The notes under the pieces: generated by a model
Told to the model about the DNA's origin: nothing
What the model saw: the letters and a program-made list of their open reading frames with translations, nothing else
The model's database searches: none
Made by a program: the position numbers and the translations under genes
IMG/VR virus record: IMGVR_UViG_3300023179_000009
Coordinates: 372,001-436,000 of that record
Length of the DNA stretch: 64,000 bases
Strand: one strand, 5' to 3'
Part shown: positions 14,701-59,267 of the stretch, in pieces
Layout of the letters: each line of letters begins with the position of its first letter
Numbering within the stretch: the first letter of the stretch is position 1

Positions 14701-17700
14701 CATTCGAAGAGTTGCTCCGCAAGGAAAGGGCTGGATGGGCCTTGCTGGAAAAATTGCAAACTTCGCTATGGCACACCCAACACTAACTGGAACCGCAATA
14801 GGAGCAACAACAGGAGCAGTGCATGGCTACGCAACGTCTGATGAAAAAGGTTGGGGTGCTGTAGGAGACTCTCTTTTTGAGGGTGCGGTTGGAGGGGGCA
14901 TAGGAGCAGCCGCTGGTTACGGTGCTGGTCGTTTAGGAGGAGCAGGAAAAGGCTTACAGGCTGGTGGCCTACCGGGAATCGCTGACGGAGCAATGGATGT
15001 TGTTGCTTCTGGAGCAAACATGATGGGAATGCCAGGATTTGGATCCGATTGCATGCCTGTTTGGGTTTGTAACTTTGGAGAAATGGGCGGAATGGGAGGA
15101 TTGTTACCGGGAATGGGTGACGGAGGAATGGCACAAACTGCCTTGGACACATTAAATACAGTCGATATGGCTTCCGATGTTGCTGGCATGATGGGTAAAG
15201 GAAAAAATGTTGCTCAAGTTGTTGACAAGGCCGATGATGTTGCCAAGGGTGGAAGTTGGTTAAGTAAAATGTTTGGTGGAGGAAATAAAGCAGCAACCAC
15301 AGTCGCCGGTGGTGCCGATGATGTTGCCAAGGGTGGAAGTTGGTTAAGTAAAATGTTTGGTGGAGGAAATAAAGCAGTAACCGCAGTCGCCGGTGGTGCC
15401 GATGATGTTGCCAAGGGTGGAAGTTGGTTAAGTAAAATGTTTGGTGGAGGAAATAAAGCAGTAACCGCAGTCGCCGGTGGTGCCGATGATGTTGTCAAGG
15501 GTGCGGGGCTATTGTCGAAAATTCCAGGTGCTGGCTTAGCCAAAGGAGTAGGAAGTTTATTGGGAAAAGTCGCTGCTCCCTTGCAACTTTTTACGGGTGC
15601 AATCACAGGTGCCATGGACGCAGAGTCTGCTGGCAGAACAACCGCAGAAGGGGCTGCTTATGGCGCTCTAACAGGTGGCGCTCACAAAGGATCTTTTGCT
15701 AGCGAAGCTTTAGGGATTCAAAAGGGAAGTGTGGCCGACGAGTCTCTGGGAATTGCTGGTGGTGCTGCTTGGGGAGCAACGTTAGGCGCTGGTGTTGGCA
15801 CTATGTTGGCACCCTTCACTGCTGGCATTAGTATTCCTGTTGCTGCGGCTGTGGGTGGTGTGATTGGTGCAGGAGCAGAGTTAGTGAAAGTTTTTACCGC
15901 CGAAGAATCTTCGATGCGAGACGCTGTGACTGGATTTGCTTCCAGCATCGGTTCAACAATCATGGAGTTGCCAGGAACTATTGGTGGTGCATTCCAAACT
16001 GTTGGCTCTTATTTGGGAGAAGGCGCTCACAGCATTTATGCAAGCATCACTGGTTTTGCTTCTAGTTTAGGATCCACTTTTACTTCTGGAATTACAAGTG
16101 TTGCAAATGGAATAGGTGGTTTTGCTTCTAGTTTAGGAAACTCTGTTTCAGAGAGTTTTTCAAGCACTGCTAAAGAGAACTGGGATAGAATGTTACAGGG
16201 TGCTAGTTTTTCTGGCGCTTTGGGACAAGTAACTGGCGGCATCGTCGATGTTGTTAATGGAAACTTAACACAAGGATTAACAAAAGTAGGCTTGTCTGGC
16301 GTGGAGGCTTTTGGAGCATTAGGCCAGACAATTTTAGGTGCCGCATCTTCTTTAAACCCATTTAGTTGGTTTAAAAACAAAGAAAAAACATCAGCCAAAG
16401 AAACAGAATCTTCCCCAGAAAAAAAACTTGCAGAAACAGCAAATAAAGAAACACAAAAAACACAACAAGATGTCATGACCCAATCAGCAGAAAAACTACA
16501 AGAAGCAGCGGTTGGTTTAGACATTGGAAAAACTGAGCAGGATTTCAAGGCAATAAGCGAAGCATCTTCTAAAAAAGATATCGATCTTTCAAATGCTATG
16601 GTTGCTAGTTTTGGCAATGTTGGCGATTCAAAAGAAATTTCAAAAGCTTTATCAACTCAAAACTCAGCGGTTTTTAATTCTATTTTGGCCGAGCAAGAGT
16701 CTTTAATAAAATCTATATCTCAAAAACGTGACGCCAAAAGTTCAGGCGGTGTGACGAGCGACTTAGGTAGCAAGCAGGGCTTTTTTGATTCTAACGCAAA
16801 AGGATTTTTAGCAAATGCTGCTTTAAGATCTAGTGACCCTATAGCCTACAACAGTTTGCAAACAGGCACAACTTTGCAAACGCCCGACGGTGTGAAAGGC
16901 TTGATGTCTGGACAAGAAATACTTGTGAAAGAAATATTTAGTGGATTTGAAAGTTCTTTAAATAATGTTGGAGTTCAATCAGCCACAATAGATGTTGGTA
17001 ATTTAAGTGAAGTTATACAAAAATTACAAAAAGGGGGTCAGGCGGAGCAGCAAGCAGCAACATCTTTACAAAGACAGTTTGAAGCTTTGGGTACTAATGT
17101 TGGAGAGGTGGAAAATAATTTTAAAATTATGAGTCAATCTTCAAAAACACCACAGGATTTATTGGGTGATCTTAGCTTTAAGCTAAACGACATGAACAAA
17201 CAAGGATTGCAAAACACTGATGAGTATAAGTCAATTCAAAAACAAACATTAGATTTGCAATCTGATTTGCAAAATTCTTCTGATGTTGTTCAAAAACAAT
17301 CAACTCCAGTTGAGGCAACGACTTCATTACAAGGAGTTTTTGAAAAGACACAAGCGTCGGAGGCTTTGACCTCCAACATAGACACTGCTATCAAATGGCA
17401 AAAAATTGAGCCAAGCGAACAAACACTAGCAGGAGAATTGTCTGGGGATTCGAAAGATAAAAATAATTTTACCGTTTATGACCAATCTGTTGAGTCGATT
17501 TTGTTTAAAATATTTGATCAATTAAAATCTTTTAATTTAACTAATATTTTTGAAAAAGATTCAAGTTTGGCGATGATGAATCTTGATCATGTATCTGTTG
17601 TTGATTCTCAAAAAAAATCTATAGAAAATAAAAGACAATTTGAGGGTTTAGACACGCCGATTCGCACATTTGAGCAGATGCCTGAATCTCTTAAAGATTT

Positions 17701-19867
17701 AAGTTCTATGGAGTCTAGTCTGCAAAATTCTTCTAATATCATTCAAAAACAATCAGTACCAGTGGAGACAACAACCTCACTGCAAGGTGTTTTTGACAAA
17801 ACACAGGCGTCGGAGGCTTTGACCTCCAATATAGATACCGCCATCAAATGGCAGAAGATTGAGCCAAGTAGTTTGGGATCAGGTTTTGAAAAAAAATGGA
17901 ATACACTTAAAGATAATGAGTTCAATGATCTTGAATCTAAATCACCTATGAAAAGAATGTTTGGTTATGATAGATCTGAAAAACAAAATAAAATGTCTTA
18001 CCAAGGAACCGGGGCAGGTGCTGCTTTGGGTGCTGCTTTGGGTGGTCCCATTGGAATTCCCGCTGGGGCCGCTGCTGGTTTTGTCTATGATACCGTTTCT
18101 AGCAACTTAAACATACAAGATGCCTTAAGCCAAACAATATCGAATATTGGTGAAAACACCAAGGGAGTTTTGAATAGTTTAAGTTTGGGTTTATTCGATA
18201 ATGAAAAAGCAGCCGAAGCACAAGATTCTTCATTAGAATACAGTGTTAAGAATATAGCCCCAAGTTTAATTGCAGGATCACTTGCTGGGGTGACAGGTGG
18301 GATGAGTTCATTCGCACTACCAATGATCAACCAATTAATGCAAGGTCAACCCAACCAATTAATGCAAGGTCAACCCAACCAATTAATGCAAGGTCAACCA
18401 AGTGATATATTACAACAAGTTTTAACTTCTAAACAAATTAATAAACCCGAGGTTTCTAGCAATCAATTAGGTTTATTCGATAATGAAAAAGCAGCCGAAG
18501 CACAAGATTCTTCATTAGAATACAGTGTTAAGAATATAGCCCCAAGTTTAATTGCAGGATCACTTGCTGGGGTGACAGGTGGGATGAGTTCATTCGCACT
18601 ACCAATGATCAACCAATTAATGCAAGGTCAACCAAGTGATATATTACAACAAGTTTTAACTTCTAAACAAATTAATAAACCCGAGGTTTCTAGCAATCAA
18701 TTAGGTTTATTCGATAATGAAAAAGCAGCCGAAGCACAAGATTCTTCATTAGAATACAGTGTTAAGAATATAGCCCCAAGTTTAATTGCAGGATCACTTG
18801 CTGGGGTGACAGGTGGGATGAGTTCATTCGCACTACCAATGATCAACCAATTAATGCAAGGTCAACCCAACCAAAAAAATCTTGAAACAAGTGAATTATT
18901 AAAAGAAAAATTTAAAGAACCGGAAGGCTTTATCGAAGCCAACCCTCAGAGTTTGGGTGTTTTTGATTTTGAAAAAACTGGAGAGGCCGAAGAGGGTTAT
19001 TTCAAACAATTGGGTGCGAGCTATGTGGATCCAAAAGATTTTATGACCACTGCTCCAATACCAATTGTTGGTGACATTATCAATCTCTTGTCAAATGTTG
19101 GTTCTAAAATATTCGGATCAACAAAAGGATCTGTCGGGGTGTCTTCTTTGGGCATGTTTGACCCAAGCCAACCCAGCGAGGCCAATGATAGCGAATCTGA
19201 TTTGATGTTAAAAAAGATACAAGGAAGCCAAAACTTTGATTTAAATAGATACAATTTAAATGCCATAGAAAATAGTATAAAAAATAAATCAAATCTTGAA
19301 AAAAATGTTGTTTTGGAAACAAGTCGTGCTTTAGATTATGATCGTCAAGCCTCGGAGGCTGCTGATTCGGCTAAGATTAATGAATTAGATTATCGATCTG
19401 ATAAAAGGGGAGATATAGAATCTAACCCAATGGACTACACAGATGATATGGGCGATCAGTCTATTAATCCAACTTATATGGATTATCGTGATCAGATGAA
19501 AGGCGAAGTAGGCACCTTGGGAATAAGTCGATATGGCATGGAATCTGCTGTTATGCAATCGAAATACGGGGAACAACCTACAGGCAATTCATCTGTGTTG
19601 CCAAGCATGGATACTATCGCAAACTATTTAACAGGGATGCAATCTACTAAATTAGATATGATGATAAAACATTTGCAGGAAATTAGAGATCGTTTATCAA
19701 CGCAAACAACTTCCTACTCTAATGTAATTGGATCTGCCGCCTCTGGGGGCAAACCGCCAGATGCCACTGGAGTTAAATCTATAGCTCGTGATTTTGTAAG
19801 TGGCTCTTGGGATTTACCGTATGGAGACTATACATCTGGAACAGTAAACACAGAGGGGCGATTTTAG
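11750..19867 (+). CDS. tape measure-like tail protein (2705 aa)
   Basis: very long; helical N-half, G/A-rich hydrophobic segments and internal repeats; sits immediately before the baseplate genes. Confidence 0.75.
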   Translation: MATDLYGRSIGDNVSVNQVNQQLLSPTQETKRPDAQEVNNDPDKKESALENLYEAINRVAEKIDSNASKDLEESKNWSKNIIDFHKDFRNTSRSDESGQKTQTGFLDLASKAIQNLWVASQSQNTIWVGISKLSNNAVQEISKSFSMSDCCEALGEATATVRGLDNLNSGVSEASKTVLSEAGGGGRGTNWGGGDDDSDDGGDGGSRRRGDSSDASDFELPDAGDMTGVIARMSTITGLISLAANSFVDLHRSVIKALDIDPIQKIFDGQILEHNNFRESIRALIHEQEGFGASNRQIEKTFINLESSINAAGVGSAKFKTMYLKNLERGLSLATAEDNRYVDALSAQKKGFTIEQKESALRERKVNRLKSIQTTALSTASSLHMSSDAMNELFMNWHMNLGLSEQSLAEIGSHMKNVSRSTGVTGSQLEKAMISADGVMKNLKKAGMVSTDTAKRVTEFMAAAQKHGFEGAAELMNVLGGGETFHDSKYKLFLGNAARFSDKPEQGVRDLVLGNTMNRSGGMENLFGGAERFVRSQLSGFETALNSVGLKSSTLDVTNLSEVMNKLRAGGKLEEAEALKRRFKGLGIEIGEVERALKTMQEETLSSSKRIDKYSKELESMKAQGLEKTDAYKQIQKKLLEAQTGQSQDVFGRIKSVMDNKEGKTGGQLEKELKDSLIQVLGDEKAAAEWQSNLPAKASEAVSQMRERAKAEGLNFDDMLKEKGITGGESQLTKGLLEGDALSNQAMTEIMQRISKKEKQGEDPITDIKGILEEIHTTLAQKLDNVGFGLSDMIVKILYVAGYLGGILMTVASGILALRMLQNIPGLLSGISGVFGGLNKALGNPLEKIFGKGGKGPLGGLLGDCLPVCPPSGGGGQMMPRRPTGGSPVVPPSPTTGPMTTVSPSGRPKNTTVLPGGPDYGGGGWAGAQGTQYQSPTVRDAATGQVTRRDMSRSDRRANAERYLDARRAAGQSGRGFGPRAGSGIRRVAPQGKGWMGLAGKIANFAMAHPTLTGTAIGATTGAVHGYATSDEKGWGAVGDSLFEGAVGGGIGAAAGYGAGRLGGAGKGLQAGGLPGIADGAMDVVASGANMMGMPGFGSDCMPVWVCNFGEMGGMGGLLPGMGDGGMAQTALDTLNTVDMASDVAGMMGKGKNVAQVVDKADDVAKGGSWLSKMFGGGNKAATTVAGGADDVAKGGSWLSKMFGGGNKAVTAVAGGADDVAKGGSWLSKMFGGGNKAVTAVAGGADDVVKGAGLLSKIPGAGLAKGVGSLLGKVAAPLQLFTGAITGAMDAESAGRTTAEGAAYGALTGGAHKGSFASEALGIQKGSVADESLGIAGGAAWGATLGAGVGTMLAPFTAGISIPVAAAVGGVIGAGAELVKVFTAEESSMRDAVTGFASSIGSTIMELPGTIGGAFQTVGSYLGEGAHSIYASITGFASSLGSTFTSGITSVANGIGGFASSLGNSVSESFSSTAKENWDRMLQGASFSGALGQVTGGIVDVVNGNLTQGLTKVGLSGVEAFGALGQTILGAASSLNPFSWFKNKEKTSAKETESSPEKKLAETANKETQKTQQDVMTQSAEKLQEAAVGLDIGKTEQDFKAISEASSKKDIDLSNAMVASFGNVGDSKEISKALSTQNSAVFNSILAEQESLIKSISQKRDAKSSGGVTSDLGSKQGFFDSNAKGFLANAALRSSDPIAYNSLQTGTTLQTPDGVKGLMSGQEILVKEIFSGFESSLNNVGVQSATIDVGNLSEVIQKLQKGGQAEQQAATSLQRQFEALGTNVGEVENNFKIMSQSSKTPQDLLGDLSFKLNDMNKQGLQNTDEYKSIQKQTLDLQSDLQNSSDVVQKQSTPVEATTSLQGVFEKTQASEALTSNIDTAIKWQKIEPSEQTLAGELSGDSKDKNNFTVYDQSVESILFKIFDQLKSFNLTNIFEKDSSLAMMNLDHVSVVDSQKKSIENKRQFEGLDTPIRTFEQMPESLKDLSSMESSLQNSSNIIQKQSVPVETTTSLQGVFDKTQASEALTSNIDTAIKWQKIEPSSLGSGFEKKWNTLKDNEFNDLESKSPMKRMFGYDRSEKQNKMSYQGTGAGAALGAALGGPIGIPAGAAAGFVYDTVSSNLNIQDALSQTISNIGENTKGVLNSLSLGLFDNEKAAEAQDSSLEYSVKNIAPSLIAGSLAGVTGGMSSFALPMINQLMQGQPNQLMQGQPNQLMQGQPSDILQQVLTSKQINKPEVSSNQLGLFDNEKAAEAQDSSLEYSVKNIAPSLIAGSLAGVTGGMSSFALPMINQLMQGQPSDILQQVLTSKQINKPEVSSNQLGLFDNEKAAEAQDSSLEYSVKNIAPSLIAGSLAGVTGGMSSFALPMINQLMQGQPNQKNLETSELLKEKFKEPEGFIEANPQSLGVFDFEKTGEAEEGYFKQLGASYVDPKDFMTTAPIPIVGDIINLLSNVGSKIFGSTKGSVGVSSLGMFDPSQPSEANDSESDLMLKKIQGSQNFDLNRYNLNAIENSIKNKSNLEKNVVLETSRALDYDRQASEAADSAKINELDYRSDKRGDIESNPMDYTDDMGDQSINPTYMDYRDQMKGEVGTLGISRYGMESAVMQSKYGEQPTGNSSVLPSMDTIANYLTGMQSTKLDMMIKHLQEIRDRLSTQTTSYSNVIGSAASGGKPPDATGVKSIARDFVSGSWDLPYGDYTSGTVNTEGRF
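15230..15502 (+). repeat. 84-bp in-frame tandem repeat, about 3.2 copies
   Basis: units start at 15230, 15314, 15398 and 15482 and encode ADDVAKGGSWLSKMFGGGNKA(A/V)T(T/A)VAGG. Confidence 0.95.
17268..17868 (+). repeat. dispersed ~150-bp in-frame duplication
   Basis: LQNSS..QKQS.PVE.TTSLQGVF.KTQASEALTSNIDTAIKWQKIEPS occurs at ~17268-17415 and ~17720-17868, mostly with synonymous differences. Confidence 0.9.
18188..18872 (+). repeat. 234-bp in-frame tandem repeat (about 2.7 copies) with a nested 24-bp repeat
   Basis: GLFDNEKAAEAQDSS... units start at 18188, 18470 and 18704; the first unit carries two extra NQLMQGQP (24-bp) copies. Confidence 0.95.
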
Positions 19868-42649: not shown

Positions 42650-42862
42650 ATGCCTCAACTCATAAAACCGAGCACAAAAGTAAAAATTATTCCTAAAGAT
42701 GGAGAGATTGAGATTACTCTTAATATAAACATAAATCTTGATGGAAAAGTTTCTGCTATTGCGGACAATGCTGATGTTTTGGTTGATGAAGAAGAAAAAG
42801 TTCCTCATATTATTCCGGATTTTTCTTCGGGTTTAAAATTAAATTTTGGGAAAAATGCATGA
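42650..42862 (+). CDS. small hypothetical protein
   Basis: 70 aa; preceded by an ACTATATTA box. Confidence 0.6.
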   Translation: MPQLIKPSTKVKIIPKDGEIEITLNININLDGKVSAIADNADVLVDEEEKVPHIIPDFSSGLKLNFGKNA

Positions 42863-43626
42863 TTGGAATTTACGCAATAAAAAATAAATTTAATAACAAA
42901 CTTTATATCGGACAGAGCGTGTCGATTAAATGTAGATGGATGAATCACAGATCAGATTTGGCCACGGGTAGGCATCCAAATAAACATTTGCTAAAATCTT
43001 ATAAGAAATATGGAGAAGATTGTTTTGAATTTTTGATTTTAGAAAATTGTTTAAAAAGAGATTTGGGGAAAAAAGAAGAAGAGTGGATAAAAAAATTTCC
43101 TAAAAAACAACTATACAATATAAACTATAACATTGTAGATTTAAATGGAGAAAAAAATCCTTTTTTTGGTAAAAAGCACAAAAAAGAATCCAAAAAGAAA
43201 ATGTCAATTTGGAAAAAACAAAATTATATAGGTGCTAAAAATCCTAATTTTGGCAAAAAATGGACAAAAGAACAAAAAACCAAAAATGTTTTAAAAAATT
43301 CAAACACCAAATTAAAAAAAACTGATGTTCTGGAAATTAAAAAATTATTAATAGATGGCAAATTAGAAGATAAAGAAATTGCTAAAAAATTTAAAATTGG
43401 AAGATCCGTGGTAACAAGAATTTCTAACGGAACAAGGTGGTCCCATGTAACAGGGGGAAGAGTAATAAAAAAAGAAAGGAGAGGTTTAAGGAACATAGGT
43501 GTTAAGAGGTCAGAGAAAACAAAACAAAAAATCAGAAATTCTATTTTGGGCATCAAAAGATCTGAAGAAACAAAACGCAAAATAAGTTTATCTAAACAAA
43601 AAAAGAAGGAGAAAAAATGTCAATAG
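42859..43626 (+). mobile_element. free-standing GIY-YIG homing endonuclease with NUMOD3 repeats
   Basis: GIYAIKN..YIGQS..RW..H, NPFFGKKH and RSEETKRKIS repeats; overlaps both neighbours. Confidence 0.92.
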
Positions 43627-44630
43627 GAGCGGATGTCGGGACTTACAATCTGGTTTGCTGTAAAAGAAATGACAATGGGGATTTTGTTTACAAACGTGAA
43701 GTGAATGCTTTTTTGTCAATGCCTCTTGATAATGATTTTGTTTTTAACATGATGAAGCAGGCTGGCGTTCCACTTATTCACAGGGAAGACGCAAACATAG
43801 CATACGCTCTTGGCGAAGCAGCCGTTAATATGGCCTACACAATGACTCAATTAGAATTAAAAAGACCAATGAAAGATGGTTGTGTTAATCCGAAAGAACA
43901 AGATGCTTTTCAAATTATGAATATTATGATCCACAATCTTTTGGATGAAATAAAGCACGATAAGGAAGTGCTAGTTTACTGTGTTCCCGCAAATGCTATA
44001 AACGAACAAACTGATGCTGATTATCATCAAAAGATTGTTGAAGCAATATTTAAAGCATACAAGTCAGAGAAAGGTTTTACCGTAGATGCGAGACCAATAA
44101 ATGAAGCAATGGCTCTTGTTTATGCCGAACTAAAGGACAAGATGTTCACTGGAATTGGGGTTTCATGCGGAGCAGGCTTAGTTAATGTTGCATTCAGTCT
44201 TTTTGGTGCTCCTGTTTTCAGTTTTGCTCTCGCCAATTCGGGGGATTGGATAGACAAACAAGCCGCTTTGGCAACAGGCGAGACGATAGCCTTTATTAAT
44301 AAAACAAAAACAAAAATAGACTTAGACAAAGAACCCGCCAATTTAGTGGAACGTGCAATAATCACTCAATATCAATTAATGATTGAAAAAACAGTGGGTG
44401 GTATCAAAAAAGGTCTGGAAAATAATAAAGAAAAAAATGCAAAGTTAGATGCACCTGTTGATTTTGTTCTTGCTGGGGGAACGTCTTCTCCTCCAGGTTT
44501 TGCGAAAATGTTTGAAAAACTTTTAAGACAAACAAAACTTCCGATAGAAATAGGCCGTGTTATTCATCCAAGCGACCCATTATTTAGTGTTGCTCGTGGT
44601 TGCTTGGTGGCCGCTGAAAATATAAAGTAA
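43617..44630 (+). CDS. actin-like ATPase (volactin-like / MreB superfamily)
   Basis: phosphate-1 IGADVGT, RPMKDG, INEAMA, phosphate-2 GVSCGAG, adenosine LAGGTS, connect-2 PLFSVARG. Confidence 0.88.
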   Translation: MSIGADVGTYNLVCCKRNDNGDFVYKREVNAFLSMPLDNDFVFNMMKQAGVPLIHREDANIAYALGEAAVNMAYTMTQLELKRPMKDGCVNPKEQDAFQIMNIMIHNLLDEIKHDKEVLVYCVPANAINEQTDADYHQKIVEAIFKAYKSEKGFTVDARPINEAMALVYAELKDKMFTGIGVSCGAGLVNVAFSLFGAPVFSFALANSGDWIDKQAALATGETIAFINKTKTKIDLDKEPANLVERAIITQYQLMIEKTVGGIKKGLENNKEKNAKLDAPVDFVLAGGTSSPPGFAKMFEKLLRQTKLPIEIGRVIHPSDPLFSVARGCLVAAENIK

Positions 44631-49287: not shown

Positions 49288-49611
49288 ATGCCATCAAAAA
49301 GCAAAAGTCAACAAAGATTGTTTGGAATAATTCATTCTTGTCAAAAGAATGAAAAGAAAAAGATATGCTCAGAGCCTAGTATTAAAAAAATTATACAAAA
49401 TATTAGTAAAAAAGACGCAAAAGATTTTGCCAGCACAAAACATGAAGATTTGCCCGAGAGGTTGGAGAGTTTTAAAAATTGGCTTGAAAGCCAAAAAGGA
49501 GAAAAAATGGAAGAAAACAAATGTATGTGCGATTGCCCACCTTGCAAAAGTGGCGATTGCTCAAGCTGCACCTGCAAAAATTGTAAATGTGAAAACTGCA
49601 CTTGCAACTAA
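49288..49611 (+). CDS. DUF3008-like protein with C-terminal metallothionein-like segment
   Basis: MPSKSKSQQRLFG...KDFASTKHEDLPER N-domain; the last 34 aa contain 11 Cys. Confidence 0.7.
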   Translation: MPSKSKSQQRLFGIIHSCQKNEKKKICSEPSIKKIIQNISKKDAKDFASTKHEDLPERLESFKNWLESQKGEKMEENKCMCDCPPCKSGDCSSCTCKNCKCENCTCN

Positions 49612-50669
49612 ATTTTATTTGCCAAAAGTATAGGGCGAGTGTCTTTTGTAAACAATTTAATGTATTTGTTTACGTAAGATACTAGTGTTTCTAAATTTTT
49701 ATTTACTAAAAGACCATTCCAATCTTTGTAGATTTTAGGTGGTCTAACGAAGTATATTTCTTTAAATCCTTTTGAAAGCAAATTTTCGCCAATATTAAGC
49801 ATTGCCTCCAAGCCAGCCTCATCTGAGTCGAATGCTAAAACCGGCACAAAGTCTTTAATTAAATCTATTTGTGTTTCTGATAAGAATTTACCGCCACAAG
49901 CACAAGCATTTAATCCTGCTTGTTTAATTGTGAGTGCATCAAACTCTCCCTCCATTATAAACAATTTTTCTCCTAAACAATTCCAATTAGTCATAAATAA
50001 AACATTTTTTTGATCCACTACAGAGGTGGGGCATTTCATATATCGAAGTGTATTCCTCCGATCTGTTATGGATCTTGCGTTGTAATAAATTAAATTACTA
50101 GATTTATCATAATATGGAATAACTATTCTATTTTTGTATTCGCCCGAAACACAAACATATAAACCTTCACAATTTATTTTTCTGGCAGTTAGGTATTGTT
50201 CGGCTTTTTTCTTCATAAAATGATGAGGGTATTCCGCCGAGATCAAATAGGAATGGGGCGGCAACTGGAGATCGACTTTTTTTTCTTTGTCTTCGTGTCT
50301 GACAATATTGTTGCTTTGATTAAAGAAATCATGAACTTTTTCTTCGAGATCACGAAGAGAAGAACCCTCAGATATTCTGTATTCGGCTTCTTCCCAGTCA
50401 ACTTTATCTAGTTCTGAAACCAAGCCAACCAAGGATCCCATTTGGTCCGTCAACCAACATCTATATGATCCGAATTCAGGATGTTTAGACTTTCCCCCGC
50501 TTGGATTCATCCATAAGTGAAATTTGTTGTCTGTTTTGCCGAGTTTATCCTCTGACCAAGGAGAATTAGTACATATTTCTGTTCCGTGTGCTGTGTTTCT
50601 AAGTTTTATGTTATGCTCTCCAAACTTTTGTTTAGACCATTCATAAAACAAATCAAAATCAACTGACAT
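49608..50669 (-). CDS. DNA primase (zinc-binding domain + TOPRIM)
   Basis: YLTARKI, NRIVIPYYD, YNARSI, MEGEFDALT, AFDSDEAG, KDWN. Confidence 0.88.
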   Translation of the reverse strand: MSVDFDLFYEWSKQKFGEHNIKLRNTAHGTEICTNSPWSEDKLGKTDNKFHLWMNPSGGKSKHPEFGSYRCWLTDQMGSLVGLVSELDKVDWEEAEYRISEGSSLRDLEEKVHDFFNQSNNIVRHEDKEKKVDLQLPPHSYLISAEYPHHFMKKKAEQYLTARKINCEGLYVCVSGEYKNRIVIPYYDKSSNLIYYNARSITDRRNTLRYMKCPTSVVDQKNVLFMTNWNCLGEKLFIMEGEFDALTIKQAGLNACACGGKFLSETQIDLIKDFVPVLAFDSDEAGLEAMLNIGENLLSKGFKEIYFVRPPKIYKDWNGLLVNKNLETLVSYVNKYIKLFTKDTRPILLANKI

Positions 50670-50734: not shown

Positions 50735-51571
50735 ATGGATATAAATCACCTGTCAGTTAGTAGAAAAAAGACATTCGATCAGTGTTCGCAGTTATACAAA
50801 TTCAAATATCATCTCAAAACACCTTCGCCGCAACCAGAGCCTTTTTACTTTGTGTATGGAAATTTGGTTCACAAAATAGCGGAGTTGTATGTTGCCGAAA
50901 AGGGGTCTAAAGCAATAGACAAAATAGCCTTAGATGTGCTGCATGGAAAAATCGAATTAAAAGAGGGCAAAAAATGTCCCAAATTGCCAAAAGAATATCA
51001 AAATAAAATAGGCAAAGACATAAAGGCAATTAAAAATTTAACAAAAAAAATAGGATTTGATGGTTATGTTGAATATGATTTTACTTACGATTTGGACCCG
51101 CCAAACAAAAAAAATGTTATAGGTTTTATAGACCGATTGATAATAAAGGAAGATTCAAAACAAAAAAAAGCTTTTATAATTGATTATAAGACAACCAAAA
51201 AAGGAAAACATCGACTTAACAACGAAACTGTTTTATATGACTTACAACTTAGATGTTACTGTAGAGTGGTTCAAAAAATATTTGACATACCAGCGTCGAA
51301 TATAAAGGCGGCACTTTTTTATTTAGATGGAGAAAATTTGATCGCTGCCCAATACAACCAAGACTCACTAGATAGGGTTGAAAAAGAATTAAAAAATGGA
51401 TATGTGACTATTGAAGAAACAAAATCAGAAACAGTTCGTGGTAGTGTTGGGTGGCACTGCAAAAACTGTGAGTATTCGAGCATTTGTCAATTTTATAAAT
51501 CCCAAAATCAATCAAATGAATCTTGGAATGGGGATTTGTTGGAATTGGGACACGATAATTCTTGGAATTAA
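50735..51571 (+). CDS. PD-(D/E)XK exonuclease (Cas4/RecB/AddB-like) with 4-Cys Fe-S staple
   Basis: LSVS...FDQC, GNLVH, GFIDRL, IIDYKT, QLRCY, CKNCEYSSIC. Confidence 0.88.
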   Translation: MDINHLSVSRKKTFDQCSQLYKFKYHLKTPSPQPEPFYFVYGNLVHKIAELYVAEKGSKAIDKIALDVLHGKIELKEGKKCPKLPKEYQNKIGKDIKAIKNLTKKIGFDGYVEYDFTYDLDPPNKKNVIGFIDRLIIKEDSKQKKAFIIDYKTTKKGKHRLNNETVLYDLQLRCYCRVVQKIFDIPASNIKAALFYLDGENLIAAQYNQDSLDRVEKELKNGYVTIEETKSETVRGSVGWHCKNCEYSSICQFYKSQNQSNESWNGDLLELGHDNSWN

Positions 51572-52461
51572 TTTTTGGGTAAAGGAATATAGTCTTCTGG
51601 GTAAATGCCCTGCGGATTATTTCTATCTATAATAGGTAATTTTCTTGCCCAACTAGATCCAATTTCGTTTAGCCACCCAAATCCTTGTTGTTCGTTGATT
51701 TCTCTTAACACTTTTAATGGTGTAAACAAACCATTCCCGTTTCCTTGTATGTCAGTTGTCCCCCAGCATATTCCAACAAAAAAATCTTCTGACATTAAAC
51801 CGCCACCGGATCTTCCTGGTCTTGGGCTATTCTCTGTTGTTACTATATCTGGCCCTCTTTCGCCTAGATAACGAACATCGTAGTGGGCAACTTCTCTACC
51901 ACCATCGCAACCAAGAGAATGCAATCTCACGTTTGTGTTAAAGTTAAAATCTGGTGGGGATATTGGAAAGTAGTTTGGAACCCAATCTGGTTTAAATTTT
52001 ACTAAACTACAATCTCTGCCTCTATCATTAAAATAAAAAAGAACTTCGGCTTTGTATGATTTTGGTTTATCTAATTTAGTTTCATTGTGATACCAAGTTA
52101 TTACGTCGCAATTTAATTTTTTTTTGGCACCATCTTCGGCATTCATGTTCCCAGACCACAGGTGACCGCAAGATTGAACATAAGCATAATTTTCCTTTGT
52201 GTCATAAAAAATTATAGTTCCAGAGCCGGATGCGTTTTTGACCGATATTTTTATACTTACACATAACCATTTTTTAAATTTTTCATCTCTTTGATCTATC
52301 GGAACTCCGCCAATTGCCAAATGTGCATATGGGTCATCCCCAACAATTGGCATTGGCTCCACTGGCTTGGTTATTTTATTTTTTTCTAAATATTTAGTGA
52401 AAAATAGAAAAACCAAAGAGCTAAAAATTAAAAATAAAAAAAATAAAATTTTTTTAGTCAT
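51568..52461 (-). CDS. trypsin-like (S1) serine protease with N-terminal membrane anchor
   Basis: GSGTII, SCGH (His), RDCSL (Asp), PGRSGGGL (Ser); hydrophobic N-terminus. Confidence 0.85.
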   Translation of the reverse strand: MTKKILFFLFLIFSSLVFLFFTKYLEKNKITKPVEPMPIVGDDPYAHLAIGGVPIDQRDEKFKKWLCVSIKISVKNASGSGTIIFYDTKENYAYVQSCGHLWSGNMNAEDGAKKKLNCDVITWYHNETKLDKPKSYKAEVLFYFNDRGRDCSLVKFKPDWVPNYFPISPPDFNFNTNVRLHSLGCDGGREVAHYDVRYLGERGPDIVTTENSPRPGRSGGGLMSEDFFVGICWGTTDIQGNGNGLFTPLKVLREINEQQGFGWLNEIGSSWARKLPIIDRNNPQGIYPEDYIPLPKN

Positions 52462-54364: not shown

Positions 54365-54679
54365 TTAAAAATAAATTTTATGTCTTAAAAAACAATCTTT
54401 TTTAAGATTGTTTTTGTTGATGGGACATATCTTTTTCTCAACAACTTGCACTTGTTTTCCAAATTGATCTTGTTTAAAAGTAACTATTGTTTGCAATTTA
54501 CCATATTTTTTTTGCCACAAATCTAAAGGAGAATCACCTAAGGCCAAAGATGGACTATTGCAGTTTGATTTTTGCTGGCAACAGCCGCAACCGCTATTGT
54601 TCTCGGGCTTTTTTCTTCTTTGATATTCTAGGGAAGATTTGCCGGGACTATAGTCAAAACAAGACATTTTTAACCTCAA
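54365..54679 (-). CDS. small basic Cys-containing hypothetical protein
   Basis: 104 aa, CGCCQQKSNC; coupled to the protease gene. Confidence 0.55.
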   Translation of the reverse strand: MRLKMSCFDYSPGKSSLEYQRRKKPENNSGCGCCQQKSNCNSPSLALGDSPLDLWQKKYGKLQTIVTFKQDQFGKQVQVVEKKICPINKNNLKKDCFLRHKIYF

Positions 54680-56121
54680 GAAATAAATTTTCTTTGTAAT
54701 TTTCCATTTACAATTTCAAAGGGAGCGTTTGCATTTTGGGAAACTTGATTTGTTTCTTTTAAATAGTTTAAAGCATCCATTGCACCCACTATGTCCTCTT
54801 CTTCGGTTGTTGATAGGGAGTCGTAAATATTATTGTTTAGATCATAAAGATAAATTTTTTCGTTTGGAATTTCTACTTCAACATCGTAAAGAAAATTTTG
54901 TTCGGATTGTGAGGAAATTATATAATCTTTTAATTTTATACTCAGGAGATTCGATTTTTTAACAAAAAATTCGTTATTTTCACATTTTGGAGCCGAAAGC
55001 ATTTTCACTTGTGTTGTTAATAAATTTCTTTTCTTAAAAATTTCTTGTATTTTATCTTGATATTTTCCATCCCCCAAGATCATGTCAGCCCACAGTATTG
55101 TTTTTGCTACTGATTGGTAAAATTTAGAGTTTAAAGGAGCGTGTTGCATTGCTTTTAAAACATATTTTAAAGAAATGTCTCTTGATTGTTTTAAAGACTC
55201 CAAACAATCTAAGGAATTTCTTTTGTCTTCGTATATCAAAACTATTAAATCATAAAAAGCACCCAAAAAGATACGACCAAAACTGTGGCACTCAGCCGCA
55301 ATATTATCATCTGTGTTCTCTGCTGGTAAAGAATTTGGATTAACATACTTAAAGTCATTTATTGCAGATCTTAAACAATCTTTATTTCTTCCGGAGTTGG
55401 GCTTCGACAACTTATAAACCGCTTGTCCAAATTGTTCGGCCAAATTTGATATTATGTTTGGCTTTTTCATGTCGCCATTCGTTTGATTAATCGCATATTC
55501 TAATATTTCTTGATGACTCATTATGTTTACAATCGCTATAAAATCAGCGAATGCTTCGTGCATTGACATTATTTCTAAAGACATGGCACTCCAAGTCTCT
55601 GGTCTATAGGCGTCAAGTATTGCGTGTCCTAATTCATGTGCCACAATATCGCTTGAATCGCAAGCAAATAAGGATCCGCCTATTTGTGGATTATTAATAT
55701 AAAAAAATCTCAAGGATTTACGGTCATAGTAAGCATTTAAGTCAACGCCAGCTCTTGGAAAAACTTGTAAAGAAGAAGCCCCAGGCCAGTTTGGTATTTT
55801 TTTATTTGTTTGAGAATTTACAACGTTTAGAGTATTTGAAATTGTAATATAGCAATTTGCTGCTTGTCCTTCCGCCGATATTCTATTATACCCGCCACCT
55901 TTGTATCCTATAATGTTAAAAAATGGAGCATTAGTTTGTTGAGGAGGTATAATTTTTTTTGTTAAAAGTGGAGTAGATGGGTCACTAATCAGGTAGTCTA
56001 CTGGTTTACTATTCGAAACATTTTCTTTTTTAATTATTTTTGTCTCAACCCTGCTTCTTAATATAGAAGAAAAATGTTTTTTAAGGTTAAAATAATTAAT
56101 AAATTTTTCAAATAAATACAT
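54676..56121 (-). CDS. M4/M36 (thermolysin/fungalysin-like) zinc metalloprotease
   Basis: NAYYD, DIVAHELGH, HEAFAD (third ligand), ECHSFG. Confidence 0.88.
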   Translation of the reverse strand: MYLFEKFINYFNLKKHFSSILRSRVETKIIKKENVSNSKPVDYLISDPSTPLLTKKIIPPQQTNAPFFNIIGYKGGGYNRISAEGQAANCYITISNTLNVVNSQTNKKIPNWPGASSLQVFPRAGVDLNAYYDRKSLRFFYINNPQIGGSLFACDSSDIVAHELGHAILDAYRPETWSAMSLEIMSMHEAFADFIAIVNIMSHQEILEYAINQTNGDMKKPNIISNLAEQFGQAVYKLSKPNSGRNKDCLRSAINDFKYVNPNSLPAENTDDNIAAECHSFGRIFLGAFYDLIVLIYEDKRNSLDCLESLKQSRDISLKYVLKAMQHAPLNSKFYQSVAKTILWADMILGDGKYQDKIQEIFKKRNLLTTQVKMLSAPKCENNEFFVKKSNLLSIKLKDYIISSQSEQNFLYDVEVEIPNEKIYLYDLNNNIYDSLSTTEEEDIVGAMDALNYLKETNQVSQNANAPFEIVNGKLQRKFIS

Positions 56122-57685: not shown

Positions 57686-58134
57686 ACGCATTTTTCTTTA
57701 AGATATGGAAGTATGAATTGGTTAAGTTCCAATGCTGTTTTTTGGCTATCCTGCAATTGATCTTCGTAGAATAAGTGAACGTAAGATTCGTGAGCGTTAC
57801 CCGAATCAGTTGACGTTTCTCGTAATCTCACAGCATACAAGTTTGATACTTCTTGCTCCATTTCTTGAGCATATTTTAAAATTTCAAAAGGACAGGTCAG
57901 GTCTATGGGGAACGGGTTTGCTTCTTGTTGTGGGATGCCGCCTAATTGCACTATAAGACGAGCAAATTCCTCCACGTGCTTGTGTTCTTCAAATGATTCT
58001 TTAATCAAAAACTCAGAGAGTTCCTCTCTGTGGAGACCTTGGATCATTGTGCCTGCTTGCAGGTAAAAAAGCATATGCTTTCTTTCATTTTTTAAATCAT
58101 TTTGAAGCATCAAGATTAAATCGTCATTTTTCAT
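57682..58134 (-). CDS. ferritin/bacterioferritin-like protein
   Basis: LKNE....FY, ESFEEHKH, IVQLGGIP, EMEQEV..LY four-helix bundle pattern. Confidence 0.8.
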   Translation of the reverse strand: MKNDDLILMLQNDLKNERKHMLFYLQAGTMIQGLHREELSEFLIKESFEEHKHVEEFARLIVQLGGIPQQEANPFPIDLTCPFEILKYAQEMEQEVSNLYAVRLRETSTDSGNAHESYVHLFYEDQLQDSQKTALELNQFILPYLKEKCV

Positions 58135-59267
58135 TTTTGTTCCTTGTGATAATGATGATTGAATGGCATCTCTGGGTTGCCGTGATCATGATTGTAATCC
58201 ATTTGTTTAAATTTAGCAAAATTAAATTCGGGGGCAGATTTTGAATTGATAATATTTAAGCCCAACTCAAAAGCATATTTTGTAATTTGTTCTAACCCCT
58301 CATAATTAATTTTATCTGGTGTGTCGTCGGGGGTGTGATAATTAGAGTGAAGACCTGTGTGTAAAAAAGCTATTGGTATTTTTTTGTTGTAAAAAGAAGC
58401 ATGATCTGATCCCCCCGAGGTTCTTCCTGTAATTTTTTTTGCAAATTTGTATTTTTGATTTAAATCATTAATTATTCTACTGACATCGAAGGAACTATCA
58501 CCTTCTGAAAATCCAGCAAAATAATGCCCTTTATCCAAATAACCAACCATGTCTAAATTGATCATAAAAACATGTTTTTTTATATCGGGTTTTTCTTCTG
58601 GGAATAAAGGATTTTCACAATAGTGACGACTGCCAATCAGACCCATCTCTTCTGCTGAGTAGGCTTGAAAAACAACCGTTCTTTTAAGATCTTCTTTTAT
58701 TAAAGAAAACGCTTTTGCCAATTCTATCAAAGCCACTGTTCCAGATGCGTTATCGTCGGCACCTGGATGAACTTCTCTTCTATTTGGGGTTCTACTCATT
58801 GATGGCCCATAACCTATATGGTCCATGTGAGCGCCGATCACTACAATTTCATCCTTAACATTTTTGTCATTTCCTTTTATTATTGCATAAATGTTTTGGG
58901 TAAAGTCATCGCCCGATTCATTTTTTGGTCCGAAATTTGTTTTTCTTATAGAAAATTTTTGATAAAAAGTTTTTAATCCAAAACTTTCAAATTTCTTTTT
59001 TATGAACTCTGCGGCCATTATATTGCCTTTTTTGCCGCTCATTCTTCCTTCTAGTTCATTACTAGATAAATAATCTAAGTCTTGTTTAAGATTTTTTGAT
59101 GAAATTCCAGATATCGCTTGTTCAATTGTGTTTTTTGGTGTGTTATCTATTTTTTCAACTTTTGGTTCATTTGGTTTTATTGGTTTTTCTTTTTTATATT
59201 CAATCAATAGTATTGATACAAAGATGATTGTTGTTACGCAAAATAATATTGGTATTAATTTTTTCAT
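58131..59267 (-). CDS. M28 family aminopeptidase with N-terminal membrane anchor
   Basis: GAHMDH, GADDNASG, AEEMGLIGS, NLDMVG, SDHASF, YHTPDD. Confidence 0.92.
   Translation of the reverse strand: MKKLIPILFCVTTIIFVSILLIEYKKEKPIKPNEPKVEKIDNTPKNTIEQAISGISSKNLKQDLDYLSSNELEGRMSGKKGNIMAAEFIKKKFESFGLKTFYQKFSIRKTNFGPKNESGDDFTQNIYAIIKGNDKNVKDEIVVIGAHMDHIGYGPSMSRTPNRREVHPGADDNASGTVALIELAKAFSLIKEDLKRTVVFQAYSAEEMGLIGSRHYCENPLFPEEKPDIKKHVFMINLDMVGYLDKGHYFAGFSEGDSSFDVSRIINDLNQKYKFAKKITGRTSGGSDHASFYNKKIPIAFLHTGLHSNYHTPDDTPDKINYEGLEQITKYAFELGLNIINSKSAPEFNFAKFKQMDYNHDHGNPEMPFNHHYHKEQK

What the first reader, a model, noticed from the sequence alone, without database searches (positions are those of the whole stretch)
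49288..49611. Metallothionein-like peptide with its own internal ribosome-binding site
Seen: the last 34 codons (49507-49611) encode MEENKCMCDCPPCKSGDCSSCTCKNCKCENCTCN, with 11 Cys in CxC/CxxC spacing and no aromatic residues. AAGGAG sits 5 nt before this ATG, in frame with an upstream DUF3008-like domain. Established: this composition is the hallmark of metallothioneins. Inference: it is made both as a fusion and as a free peptide, buffering Zn/Cu or supplying metal to Cys-rich virion parts or the adjacent primase.
Basis: partly seen in the sequence, partly recalled or inferred. Interest (0 to 1): 0.65.

Follow-up and report, generated by a model that had tools for sequence, protein, structure and literature searches.

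The report
Phage metallothionein-like tail with internal start
A small gene of a 459-kb freshwater phage joins a phage-typical domain (DUF3008) to a conserved 11-cysteine module that looks like a metallothionein, has bacterial relatives next to copper-sensor genes, and carries its own conserved ribosome-binding site, so it is probably a phage metal-binding peptide made in two sizes; none of this has been tested at the bench.

Summary
ORF 49288-49611 (+) encodes 107 aa. Residues 4-58 match Pfam DUF3008 above the curated cut-off. Residues 79-106 carry 11 Cys in the spacing C-x-C-x-C-x2-C-x4-C-x2-C-x-C-x2-C-x-C-x2-C-x-C. AAGGAG lies 5 nt before the in-frame ATG at 49507.

The Cys module is under purifying selection (dN/dS 0.04-0.3). 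All 11 Cys are invariant in five syntenic relatives from other large-phage contigs.

An exhaustive profile search and a word search show a small family with no Pfam model. It occurs fused to DUF3008 in phages and free-standing as 42-71 aa genes in phages and bacteria. One free-standing copy sits in the same slot before the primase. In three Gastranaerophilales genomes it forms tandem repeats in a secreted protein, each directly upstream of a CsoR/RicR-type metal-sensor gene.

AAGGAG plus ATG is kept in 6 of 6 close fusions with DNA, across different amino acids. It matches the genome's own preferred ribosome-binding words.

No known metallothionein family matches by sequence. No RNA or protein data exist. 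Nothing links the gene functionally to the primase or to virion parts.

Verdict: a probable phage metallothionein-like module with a nested in-frame start. It is a new variant of known kinds, and the function is inferred.

The parts
49288..49611 (+). Full ORF, 107 aa plus stop (P0001): DUF3008 domain, linker helix and 11-Cys module
   Evidence: Syntenic homologues are in L003, L006, L008, L009 and L017.
49297..49461 (+). DUF3008 domain (residues 4-58). Basic (pI 9.75 for residues 1-58) and helical.
   Evidence: Pfam PF11450, 28.3 bits, above the cut-off of 24. PHROG matches down to E 1e-14. AlphaFold2 gives helices with pLDDT 77-84. pI.
49462..49506 (+). Linker (residues 59-73) with the conserved F-x-x-W helix. 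This helix also begins the free-standing versions of the module.
   Evidence: Alignments A2 and A5. Length and sequence vary between homologues.
49479..49494 (.). 16-nt hairpin just 5' of the internal ribosome-binding site. On the - strand a T-run follows it, so it may be the terminator of the convergent primase gene.
   Evidence: Kept in L006 and L009 but not in L003.
49496..49501 (+). AAGGAG, the internal Shine-Dalgarno-like site, 5 nt before the ATG
   Evidence: Conserved in 6 of 6 close fusions with DNA. It matches the genome's own upstream-enriched words AAAGGAG, AGGAGAA and GGAGAAA.
49507..49611 (+). Nested in-frame ORF: 34 codons plus stop, predicted 3.7-kDa Cys-rich peptide
   Evidence: The Met is kept 2-5 residues before the first Cys in P0001-P0005, P0076, P0080 and P0081.
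49522..49605 (+). 11-Cys module (residues 79-106), spacing C-x-C-x-C-x2-C-x4-C-x2-C-x-C-x2-C-x-C-x2-C-x-C
   Evidence: Invariant Cys columns in A2, A3 and A5. dN/dS 0.04-0.3. Profile hits.
49608..50669 (-). Toprim-type DNA primase. It is convergent and its stop overlaps the ORF's end by 4 nt. It is a syntenic neighbour and is not shown to be functionally linked.
   Evidence: Synteny.

Best explanation
The gene encodes a small cytoplasmic phage protein built of two modules.

N-terminal module. Residues 4-58 form a basic, helical DUF3008 domain. In other phages this domain carries many unrelated C-terminal extensions. In one cyanophage record a DUF3008 protein is annotated as a virion protein.

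C-terminal module. Residues 79-106 form a 28-residue, 11-cysteine module from a small family that has no Pfam model. I infer that this module folds only around metal ions, as a thiolate cluster in the manner of a metallothionein domain. Eleven Cys is the number that holds four divalent ions in the mammalian alpha domain; that figure is from my own knowledge. The metal is most likely Cu(I) or Zn(II).

Two products. In the clade of large freshwater phages to which this 459-kb genome belongs, the message probably gives two products. One is the 107-aa fusion, made from a start without a Shine-Dalgarno site. The other is a 34-aa free peptide, made from the conserved AAGGAG-N5-ATG. This would be a nested in-frame gene like T7 4A/4B.

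Shown:
- domain identity of the N-terminal part
- conservation and purifying selection on the module
- occurrence of the module both fused and free
- the link between bacterial relatives and CsoR-type sensor genes
- conservation of the ribosome-binding site plus ATG

Inferred:
- metal binding, and which metal
- use of the internal start
- the benefit to the phage, which could be buffering or supplying metal during infection, or carrying metal or thiols in the virion
For: Real gene. The ORF is real and DUF3008 scores above the cut-off.

Conservation. The 11 Cys are invariant and dN/dS is 0.04-0.3.

Family size. HMMER over 1.84 billion representatives with the tail profile finds only five clusters. 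They are P0005 (the query's own family), P0076 (a second DUF3008 fusion), P0077 (a secreted tandem-repeat protein) and two free-standing peptides of 52 and 65 aa.

Free-standing copy in the same slot. The 52-aa peptide P0078 lies in the same syntenic slot before the primase in a 153-kb relative. It is coupled by a TAATG overlap to an upstream ORF that is not DUF3008.

More members. The word search adds further fusions and free-standing genes of 42-98 aa.

Metal link. In three Gastranaerophilales genomes, a signal peptide plus tandem modules is followed at once by a PF02583 gene. That gene scores E 4.9e-22, its best NCBIfam match is RicR, and it carries the C...H-x3-C ligand pattern. A CsoR-family repressor controlling a metallothionein has precedent in RicR and mymT (PMC3944814).

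Structure prediction. AlphaFold2 gives the tail low confidence (pLDDT 45-61) beside a confident helical domain. This fits a metal-dependent fold.

Internal start:
- AAGGAG or AAGGAGGAG lies 3-8 nt before the ATG in 6 of 6 fusions with DNA, although the amino acids differ.
- The chance that synonymous codon choice alone gives AAGGAG in four lineages is about 0.001.
- The site matches the genome's own upstream-enriched words.
- Only 0.2% of internal in-frame ATGs have such a site.
Against: - No sequence match to any Pfam metallothionein family or solved metallothionein at E<=10.
- No experimental metal data for any member of the family.
- The CsoR link holds for secreted tandem-repeat relatives, not for the phage form. 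It was found in only 2 of 121 sampled genomes of that order, with a third genome reached by a separate scan.
- The free-standing bacterial copy (P0088) has no metal genes beside it.
- The phage has no CsoR or HMA gene.
- With the residues Lys-Gly-Glu, AAGGAG arises by codon choice 29% of the time, so much of the weight rests on the Lys-Glu-Glu clade. The lineages are also related, not independent.
- The natural free-standing genes start at the F-x-x-W helix, 13-35 residues before the first Cys, not at the internal Met.
- More distant fusions lack a Met beside the module: P0085 has none and in P0083 it lies 8 residues before the first Cys.
- No RNA contig covers the locus.
Confidence: 0.55

Rival explanations
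1. Only the 107-aa fusion is made. The AAGGAG is a by-product of Lys-Gly-Glu or Lys-Glu-Glu codons in a purine-rich linker, or acts at most as a translational pause. The Met is an ordinary conserved residue. The Cys module may still bind metal.
For: Lys-Gly-Glu gives AAGGAG 29% of the time by codon choice alone. More distant fusions have no Met beside the module: P0085 has none and P0083 has it 8 residues before the first Cys. Natural free-standing genes begin further upstream, at the F-x-x-W helix. There is no RNA or protein evidence.
Against: AAGGAG plus ATG is kept in 6 of 6 close fusions with DNA. In two of them the rare codons AAG-GAG-GAG are used, although AAG has 20% and GAG 25% usage in this genome. 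The site equals the genome's preferred ribosome-binding words. Met is kept in 8 of 8 proteins of the close clade, P0001-P0005, P0076, P0080 and P0081.
Confidence: 0.3
2. The Cys module is a structural zinc-cluster or disulfide-rich knot that mediates binding to a protein, to DNA or to the virion. It would resemble CXC or pre-SET Zn3Cys9 domains and would not be a metal buffer or store. DUF3008 would bring it to its place of action.
For: - The module is fused to a basic helical domain (pI 9.75).
- A DUF3008 protein is annotated as a virion protein in S-SCSM1.
- Another DUF3008 protein, P0011, carries a different zinc-finger-like Cys tail.
- There is no hit to metallothionein families.
Against: Tandem copies occur in secreted proteins next to CsoR-type sensors in three genomes. 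That fits metal handling, not DNA binding. Free-standing 42-52 aa versions exist without any partner domain. Composition and spacing are those of metallothioneins.
Confidence: 0.2
3. The protein is a RiPP precursor. DUF3008 would be a conserved leader and the Cys/Ser/Thr-rich tail a core peptide that is modified and cleaved off.
For: DUF3008 proteins have a conserved N-terminal part and highly variable C-terminal parts. A trypsin-like peptidase gene is conserved two genes away.
Against: No radical-SAM, lanthionine-synthetase or YcaO-type gene lies within about 10 kb on either side. The core is strongly conserved rather than variable. DUF3008 also occurs inside proteins of 500-1000 aa. Bacterial relatives have a signal peptide plus tandem modules beside a metal sensor.
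Confidence: 0.03

Closest known systems
Metallothioneins. This is a functionally defined class that includes the vertebrate alpha and beta domains, mycobacterial MymT and cyanobacterial SmtA/BmtA.
   Same: The module is small, about 32% Cys, uses CxC and CxxC spacing and has no aromatic residue or His. Its 11 Cys equal the number in a four-metal alpha-type domain (my own knowledge). Relatives lie beside CsoR-family sensors, as mymT is controlled by RicR (PMC3944814).
   Different: There is no detectable sequence relation to any Pfam or solved metallothionein. The gene is phage-encoded and fused to DUF3008. Metal binding is untested. SmtA/BmtA differ further: they have a zinc-finger-like fold with His and aromatic residues (my own knowledge).
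Secreted tandem Cys-repeat proteins of Candidatus Gastranaerophilales, encoded next to a CsoR/RicR-like gene (P0077; L019 4079-4741; L034 1084-1686)
   Same: They carry the same module by profile (E 1e-4 to 1e-9) and the same Cys spacing with an invariant Glu.
   Different: They have a signal peptide, 3 to 5 or more tandem copies, no DUF3008 and no F-x-x-W helix. They are bacterial and operonic with a metal sensor.
Nested in-frame genes with an internal ribosome-binding site, such as T7 gene 4A/4B, lambda C/Nu3 and IF2 alpha/beta (my own knowledge)
   Same: A strong Shine-Dalgarno site plus ATG lies inside an ORF, in frame. It would give a C-terminal product alongside the full-length one.
   Different: Here the short product would be only 34 aa, and neither product has been observed.
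DUF3008 (PF11450) proteins of T4-like cyanophages
   Same: The N-terminal domain is a member of this family. It is 42-54% identical to copies in S-WAM1, S-SCSM1, S-ShM2 and others.
   Different: Those copies carry no Cys module. The window's phage is a 459-kb freshwater phage with no DNA similarity to any deposited phage record.

Membership tests
Metallothionein (functional class) | Low molecular weight and very high Cys content in CxC/CxxC motifs | tested here: met
   11 Cys in 34 aa, 3.7 kDa.
Metallothionein (functional class) | Few or no aromatic residues or His in the Cys-rich part | tested here: met
   0 aromatic residues and 0 His in residues 74-107.
Metallothionein (functional class) | Cys positions conserved among homologues | tested here: met
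   11 invariant Cys columns in five homologues. 9 are invariant and 2 nearly invariant across 13 phage and bacterial modules.
Metallothionein (functional class) | Binds several metal ions in thiolate clusters | not testable with these tools
   Needs metal titration with ESI-MS or ICP-MS. The only indirect support is the CsoR-type neighbour of bacterial relatives.
Curated metallothionein sequence families (Pfam; solved structures) | Significant profile or sequence match | tested here: not met
   No Pfam family at E<=10 for any of five tails. No metallothionein chain in the PDB at E<=10. No NCBIfam hit.
DUF3008 (PF11450) | Score above Pfam's gathering cut-off | tested here: met
   28.3 bits against 24, residues 4-58, covering profile positions 2-56 of 57.
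Nested in-frame gene with internal start | Shine-Dalgarno site at functional spacing before an in-frame ATG, conserved beyond what the protein sequence demands | tested here: met
   6 of 6 homologues with DNA. Codon-resampling product about 0.001. Matches the genome's upstream-enriched words.
Nested in-frame gene with internal start | Short product or internal initiation observed | not testable with these tools
   No RNA run holds the locus. There are no ribosome-profiling or proteome data.
RiPP precursor | Modifying enzyme encoded nearby | tested here: not met
   The neighbours are a primase, a PD-(D/E)XK nuclease, peptidases, an actin homologue and a terminase. There is no radical-SAM, LanM or YcaO gene.
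Unnamed 11-Cys module family (profiles A3 and A5) | Profile match with the full Cys spacing | tested here: met
   By construction for the window. Independent members are P0076-P0079 and P0080-P0087. There is a single copy in the genome.

The most novel reading that the evidence does not exclude
DUF3008 is a targeting or DNA-associated domain that takes variable cargo into the virion. The full-length fusion would then be packaged and injected, delivering a metal-loaded or metal-scavenging thiolate module into the host at the start of infection. The separately translated 34-aa peptide would buffer Cu or Zn in the infected cell. This would be the first phage metallothionein system, with two products in two places from one gene. 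It might be used against metal-dependent host defences or against metal stress.
Probability: 0.1. Interest if true: 0.8.

Novelty: new variant of a known kind. Interest (0 to 1): 0.58.

Why it matters
Metallothionein-like proteins are hardly known in phages. Full-text searches for DUF3008 found no paper, and searches for metallothionein with phage terms found no report of a phage-encoded one.

If the module binds metal, it defines a new metallothionein family with no Pfam model, shared between large phages and bacteria. It would add trace-metal handling to the host functions that large phages take over. It would also give DUF3008, a widespread cyanophage domain of unknown function, its first cargo with a predictable chemistry.

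The conserved internal start makes a simple, testable case of a nested micro-peptide gene in an uncultured phage.

Tried and rejected
**Searches that found nothing**
- DNA similarity of 8 kb around the gene to deposited phages: none. One search was a length slip.
- Word search with the tail alone for 23-73 aa proteins: nothing. The later alignment-based search did find free-standing members.
- PDB sequence search with the full-length profile and with the tail profile: only chance rows.
- Pfam at E<=10 on five tails: nothing.
- ESM Atlas feature search of the tail: best score 0.80, which is noise level.
- Foldseek of the DUF3008 model against the PDB: no match at E<=0.001. Against BFVD it returned only other DUF3008 phage proteins. 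The fold therefore gives no function.
- The phage genome has no CsoR or HMA gene.

**Expression**
- No listed holder of the DNA is an RNA run. Two metatranscriptome runs of one source study gave no contig on the locus. This is no evidence of silence.

**Ideas rejected or downgraded**
- The small Cys-rich ORF next to a CsoR-like gene and a ZitB-like CDF exporter in an alphaproteobacterial MAG (L020) resembles P0077 by tblastn. It does not match the module profile. I treat it as an analogue, not a member.
- The idea that the upstream ORF of the split version (L010) is a separated DUF3008 was rejected: it has no DUF3008 match.
- A metal supply to the primase was rejected for lack of evidence. The gene is convergent and no zinc-ribbon family matched.
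- A RiPP precursor was rejected (see the rival explanations).

It was rerun from the files in /data.
- No alternative genetic code was applied by me. The tool itself flagged P0079 as readable only with TGA=W.

Full report
**What is there**

The window is bases 372001-436000 of a 458,813-bp IMG/VR virus record. CheckV estimates it as 91% complete, and its GC content is 35%. No deposited phage record matches it at the DNA level. The DNA recurs mainly in lake and freshwater metagenomes from several studies.

ORF 49288-49611 (+) encodes 107 aa (P0001). Its parts are:
- Residues 4-58 match Pfam DUF3008 above the curated cut-off: 28.3 bits against 24, E 2e-6. They also match five PHROG families of unknown function.
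- Residues 59-73 are a variable linker with a conserved F-x-x-W helix.
- Residues 74-107 begin with Met and hold 11 Cys in the spacing C-x-C-x-C-x2-C-x4-C-x2-C-x-C-x2-C-x-C-x2-C-x-C. They contain no aromatic residue and no His.

AAGGAG lies at 49496-49501, five bases before the ATG at 49507.

**Is it more than chance?**

The genome's Cys frequency is 1.9%. Eleven Cys in 34 residues then has a probability of about 2e-11.

Four full-length homologues of 59-86% identity (P0002-P0005), and a fifth with a 100-aa insert (P0076), keep all 11 Cys. Across these sequences the module has dN/dS of 0.04-0.3, while synonymous sites are close to saturation (pS 0.4-1.0). The Cys codons switch between TGT and TGC. 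This is a translated sequence under strong purifying selection.

**Context**

The relatives lie on contigs of 56-153 kb with the same gene order. The order is: a Volactin-type actin homologue, a protein of about 1,200 aa, a gene of about 165 aa on the opposite strand, this gene, a convergent Toprim primase whose stop overlaps by 4 nt, and a PD-(D/E)XK nuclease.

Nothing within about 10 kb looks like a peptide-modifying enzyme or a metal-homeostasis gene. The whole record has no CsoR or HMA gene and holds only one copy of the module.

**The Cys module is an independent unit**

A profile of the five tails was searched with HMMER against 1.84 billion representatives. It found five clusters at E<=0.001:
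- P0005, which is the query's own family.
- P0076, a second DUF3008 fusion.
- P0077, a secreted tandem-repeat protein.
- P0078, a free-standing peptide of 52 aa.
- P0079, a free-standing peptide of 65 aa.

P0078 lies in the same slot before the primase in a 153-kb relative (L010). It starts at a TAATG overlap with an upstream 112-aa ORF that has no DUF3008 match. Six contigs carry it.

A word search with a wider alignment (A5) added more members:
- More DUF3008 fusions in other phage-like contexts: P0080, P0081, P0083 and P0085.
- More free-standing genes: P0087 (42 aa, phage-like contig), P0084 and P0086, and the P0082/P0088 cluster (71 aa). The last lies in a bacterial chromosomal context and is seen on many contigs.

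Across 13 phage and bacterial modules, 9 Cys and one Glu are invariant and 2 more Cys are nearly so.

**Evidence for metal handling**

P0077 belongs to a Candidatus Gastranaerophilaceae MAG. Two further genomes of that order carry related proteins (L019 and L034). All three proteins have a signal peptide followed by three to more than five tandem modules.

In all three genomes the next gene, within 0-55 nt, is a PF02583 metal-sensing repressor:
- The Pfam match scores E 4.9e-22.
- The best NCBIfam match is the copper sensor RicR, well below its equivalog cut-off. This is therefore family-level evidence only.
- The C...H-x3-C ligand pattern is present. I know that pattern as the Cu(I)-type CsoR fingerprint from my own knowledge.

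These points rest. ABC and RND-type export genes follow in L013.

A CsoR-family repressor controlling a metallothionein gene is known from the RicR regulon, which includes mymT (PMC3944814).

This is guilt by association for relatives, not for the phage protein, and the pair is rare. It was found in 2 of 121 sampled genomes of the order, with a third genome reached by another route.

A Cys-rich ORF beside a CsoR-like gene and a ZitB-like CDF exporter in an alphaproteobacterial MAG (L020) does not match the module profile. I count it only as an analogue.

AlphaFold2 models the DUF3008 part as confident helices (pLDDT 77-84). It leaves the tail at pLDDT 45-61, as expected for a fold that needs metal.

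**What it is not**

No Pfam metallothionein family, no NCBIfam model and no solved metallothionein matches the tail, even at E<=10. By sequence it is therefore not a member of any described metallothionein family. Because metallothioneins are a polyphyletic class defined by function, this lowers the claim 'member of family X'. It does not lower the claim 'works like a metallothionein'.

**The internal start**

In all six close fusions with DNA in hand, AAGGAG or AAGGAGGAG lies 3-8 nt before the conserved ATG. This holds although the residues there differ: Gln-Lys-Gly-Glu-Lys, Lys-Gly-Glu-Asn-Ile, Phe-Lys-Glu-Glu-Lys and Lys-Gly-Glu-Asn.

- **Codon choice.** In the Lys-Glu-Glu clade the codons are AAG-GAG-GAG, while the genome uses AAG for 20% of Lys and GAG for 25% of Glu. 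I resampled synonymous codons with the genome's usage. This gives AAGGAG with probability 0.29, 0.29, 0.05 and 0.29 in the four lineages, a product of about 0.001. The lineages are related, so this overstates the significance somewhat.
- **Fit to the genome's own sites.** The words most enriched in the 40 nt upstream of crude gene starts include AAAGGAG, AGGAGAA and GGAGAAA, at 6-9 times expectation. These are exactly the internal site.
- **Rarity.** Only 4 of 1974 internal in-frame ATGs have AAGGAG in the Shine-Dalgarno window.
- **The main start.** It has no Shine-Dalgarno site in any homologue. The family-wide conservation from the first Met shows that it is used. Only about a fifth of crude starts in this genome show GGAG, so a start without it is normal here.

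Against the internal start:
- Lys-Gly-Glu gives the site cheaply.
- P0085 has no Met near the module, and in P0083 the Met lies 8 residues before the first Cys.
- The natural free-standing genes start 13-35 residues before the first Cys, at the F-x-x-W helix, not at the internal Met.
- No RNA or protein data exist.

I put the internal start at a little better than even.

**Mechanism proposed**

The full-length protein places a metal-thiolate module on a basic helical domain whose role is unknown. DUF3008 carries many unrelated C-terminal extensions, including a different zinc-finger-like tail in P0011. It also occurs inside proteins of 500-1000 aa. The 69-aa DUF3008 protein of cyanophage S-SCSM1 is annotated as a virion protein in its record.

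The 34-aa product, if made, would be a free cytoplasmic metal buffer. Which metal is open. The CsoR-type neighbours of relatives point to Cu(I), and the 11-Cys count would equally fit four Zn or Cd ions.

The phage encodes zinc-type metallopeptidase homologues within 10 kb: one M36-like and one M28. That shows a possible demand for metal but is no evidence of a link.

The primase is convergent and matched no zinc-ribbon family.

**Novelty and score**

The kinds are known: metallothionein-like modules and nested in-frame starts. What is new is the family, which has no Pfam model, together with its presence in phages, its fusion to DUF3008 and the conserved internal start. I found no paper on DUF3008 and none on a phage-encoded metallothionein in the library searched. 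Function rests on inference, so interest is moderate to good at 0.58.

I applied no alternative genetic code.

Noticed in passing
G000:C1:106365-106535 (-) and G000:C1:179751-179945 (+), outside the window: Two more short Cys-rich open frames lie in the same 459-kb record. One has a lipoprotein-like signal followed by 11 Cys in 34 aa. The other has 10 Cys in 34 aa. Neither matches the module profile.
   Followed up: partly
window 49479-49494: A 16-nt hairpin lies inside the gene, just before the internal ribosome-binding site. On the - strand a T-run follows it, so it looks like the terminator of the convergent primase. The primase transcript would then be antisense to the whole Cys-coding part. 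It is kept in L006 and L009 but not in L003.
   Followed up: partly
window 43617-44630 (+); L010 1-1508: A Volactin-type actin homologue (PF25216, E 4.8e-69) is syntenic in all relatives. In L010 the gene carries an intein with a LAGLIDADG domain.
   Followed up: no
window 42859-43626 (+): A GIY-YIG plus NUMOD3 homing-endonuclease gene lies just upstream of the actin homologue.
   Followed up: no
whole record G000, 40 nt upstream of crude gene starts: Words of a TACCAACTAG-like motif are about 7 times enriched upstream of genes. This may be a phage promoter or regulatory site. A few genes have TATAAATA 5-7 nt before the ATG.
   Followed up: no
window 54676-56121 (-), 58131-59267 (-), 51568-52461 (-): Three peptidase homologues lie close by: one M36-like and one M28 (both zinc-type families) and one trypsin-like. 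The trypsin-like gene is conserved in the synteny.
   Followed up: no
L021 2990-3090 (IMG/VR contig of 42 kb): A copy of the Cys module has no canonical start codon in frame. It lies beside a 413-aa TnpB-like ORF, so it may be a remnant cut off by a mobile element.
   Followed up: partly
L011 231-428, L012 192-389: The free-standing 65-aa member P0079 is readable only with TGA=W according to the tool. That TGA aligns with the invariant Trp of the F-x-x-W helix. With table 11, an ATG 7 codons before the first Cys would be the first start.
   Followed up: partly
window 14001-16000, inside the 2705-aa ORF 11750-19867: An island of 50% GC lies in a genome of about 33-35% GC.
   Followed up: no
P0011 (129 aa, metagenome): This DUF3008 protein carries a different Cys-rich tail of the CxxCxGxG type. 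It is a second case of a metal-finger-like cargo on this domain.
   Followed up: no
L028 2501-2710 (MK867354.2, SSCSM1_93): The 69-aa DUF3008 protein of Synechococcus phage S-SCSM1 is annotated 'virion protein' in the record, as are several of its neighbours.
   Followed up: no
L003, L006, L008, L017: about 20 nt before the main ATG: A conserved A/T-rich word, GCATAAATATTTT, lies directly before the start of the gene in four relatives. It resembles a T4-late-type -10 element and is so close to the ATG that the message could be nearly leaderless. The window itself has a different A/T-rich sequence there.
   Followed up: no
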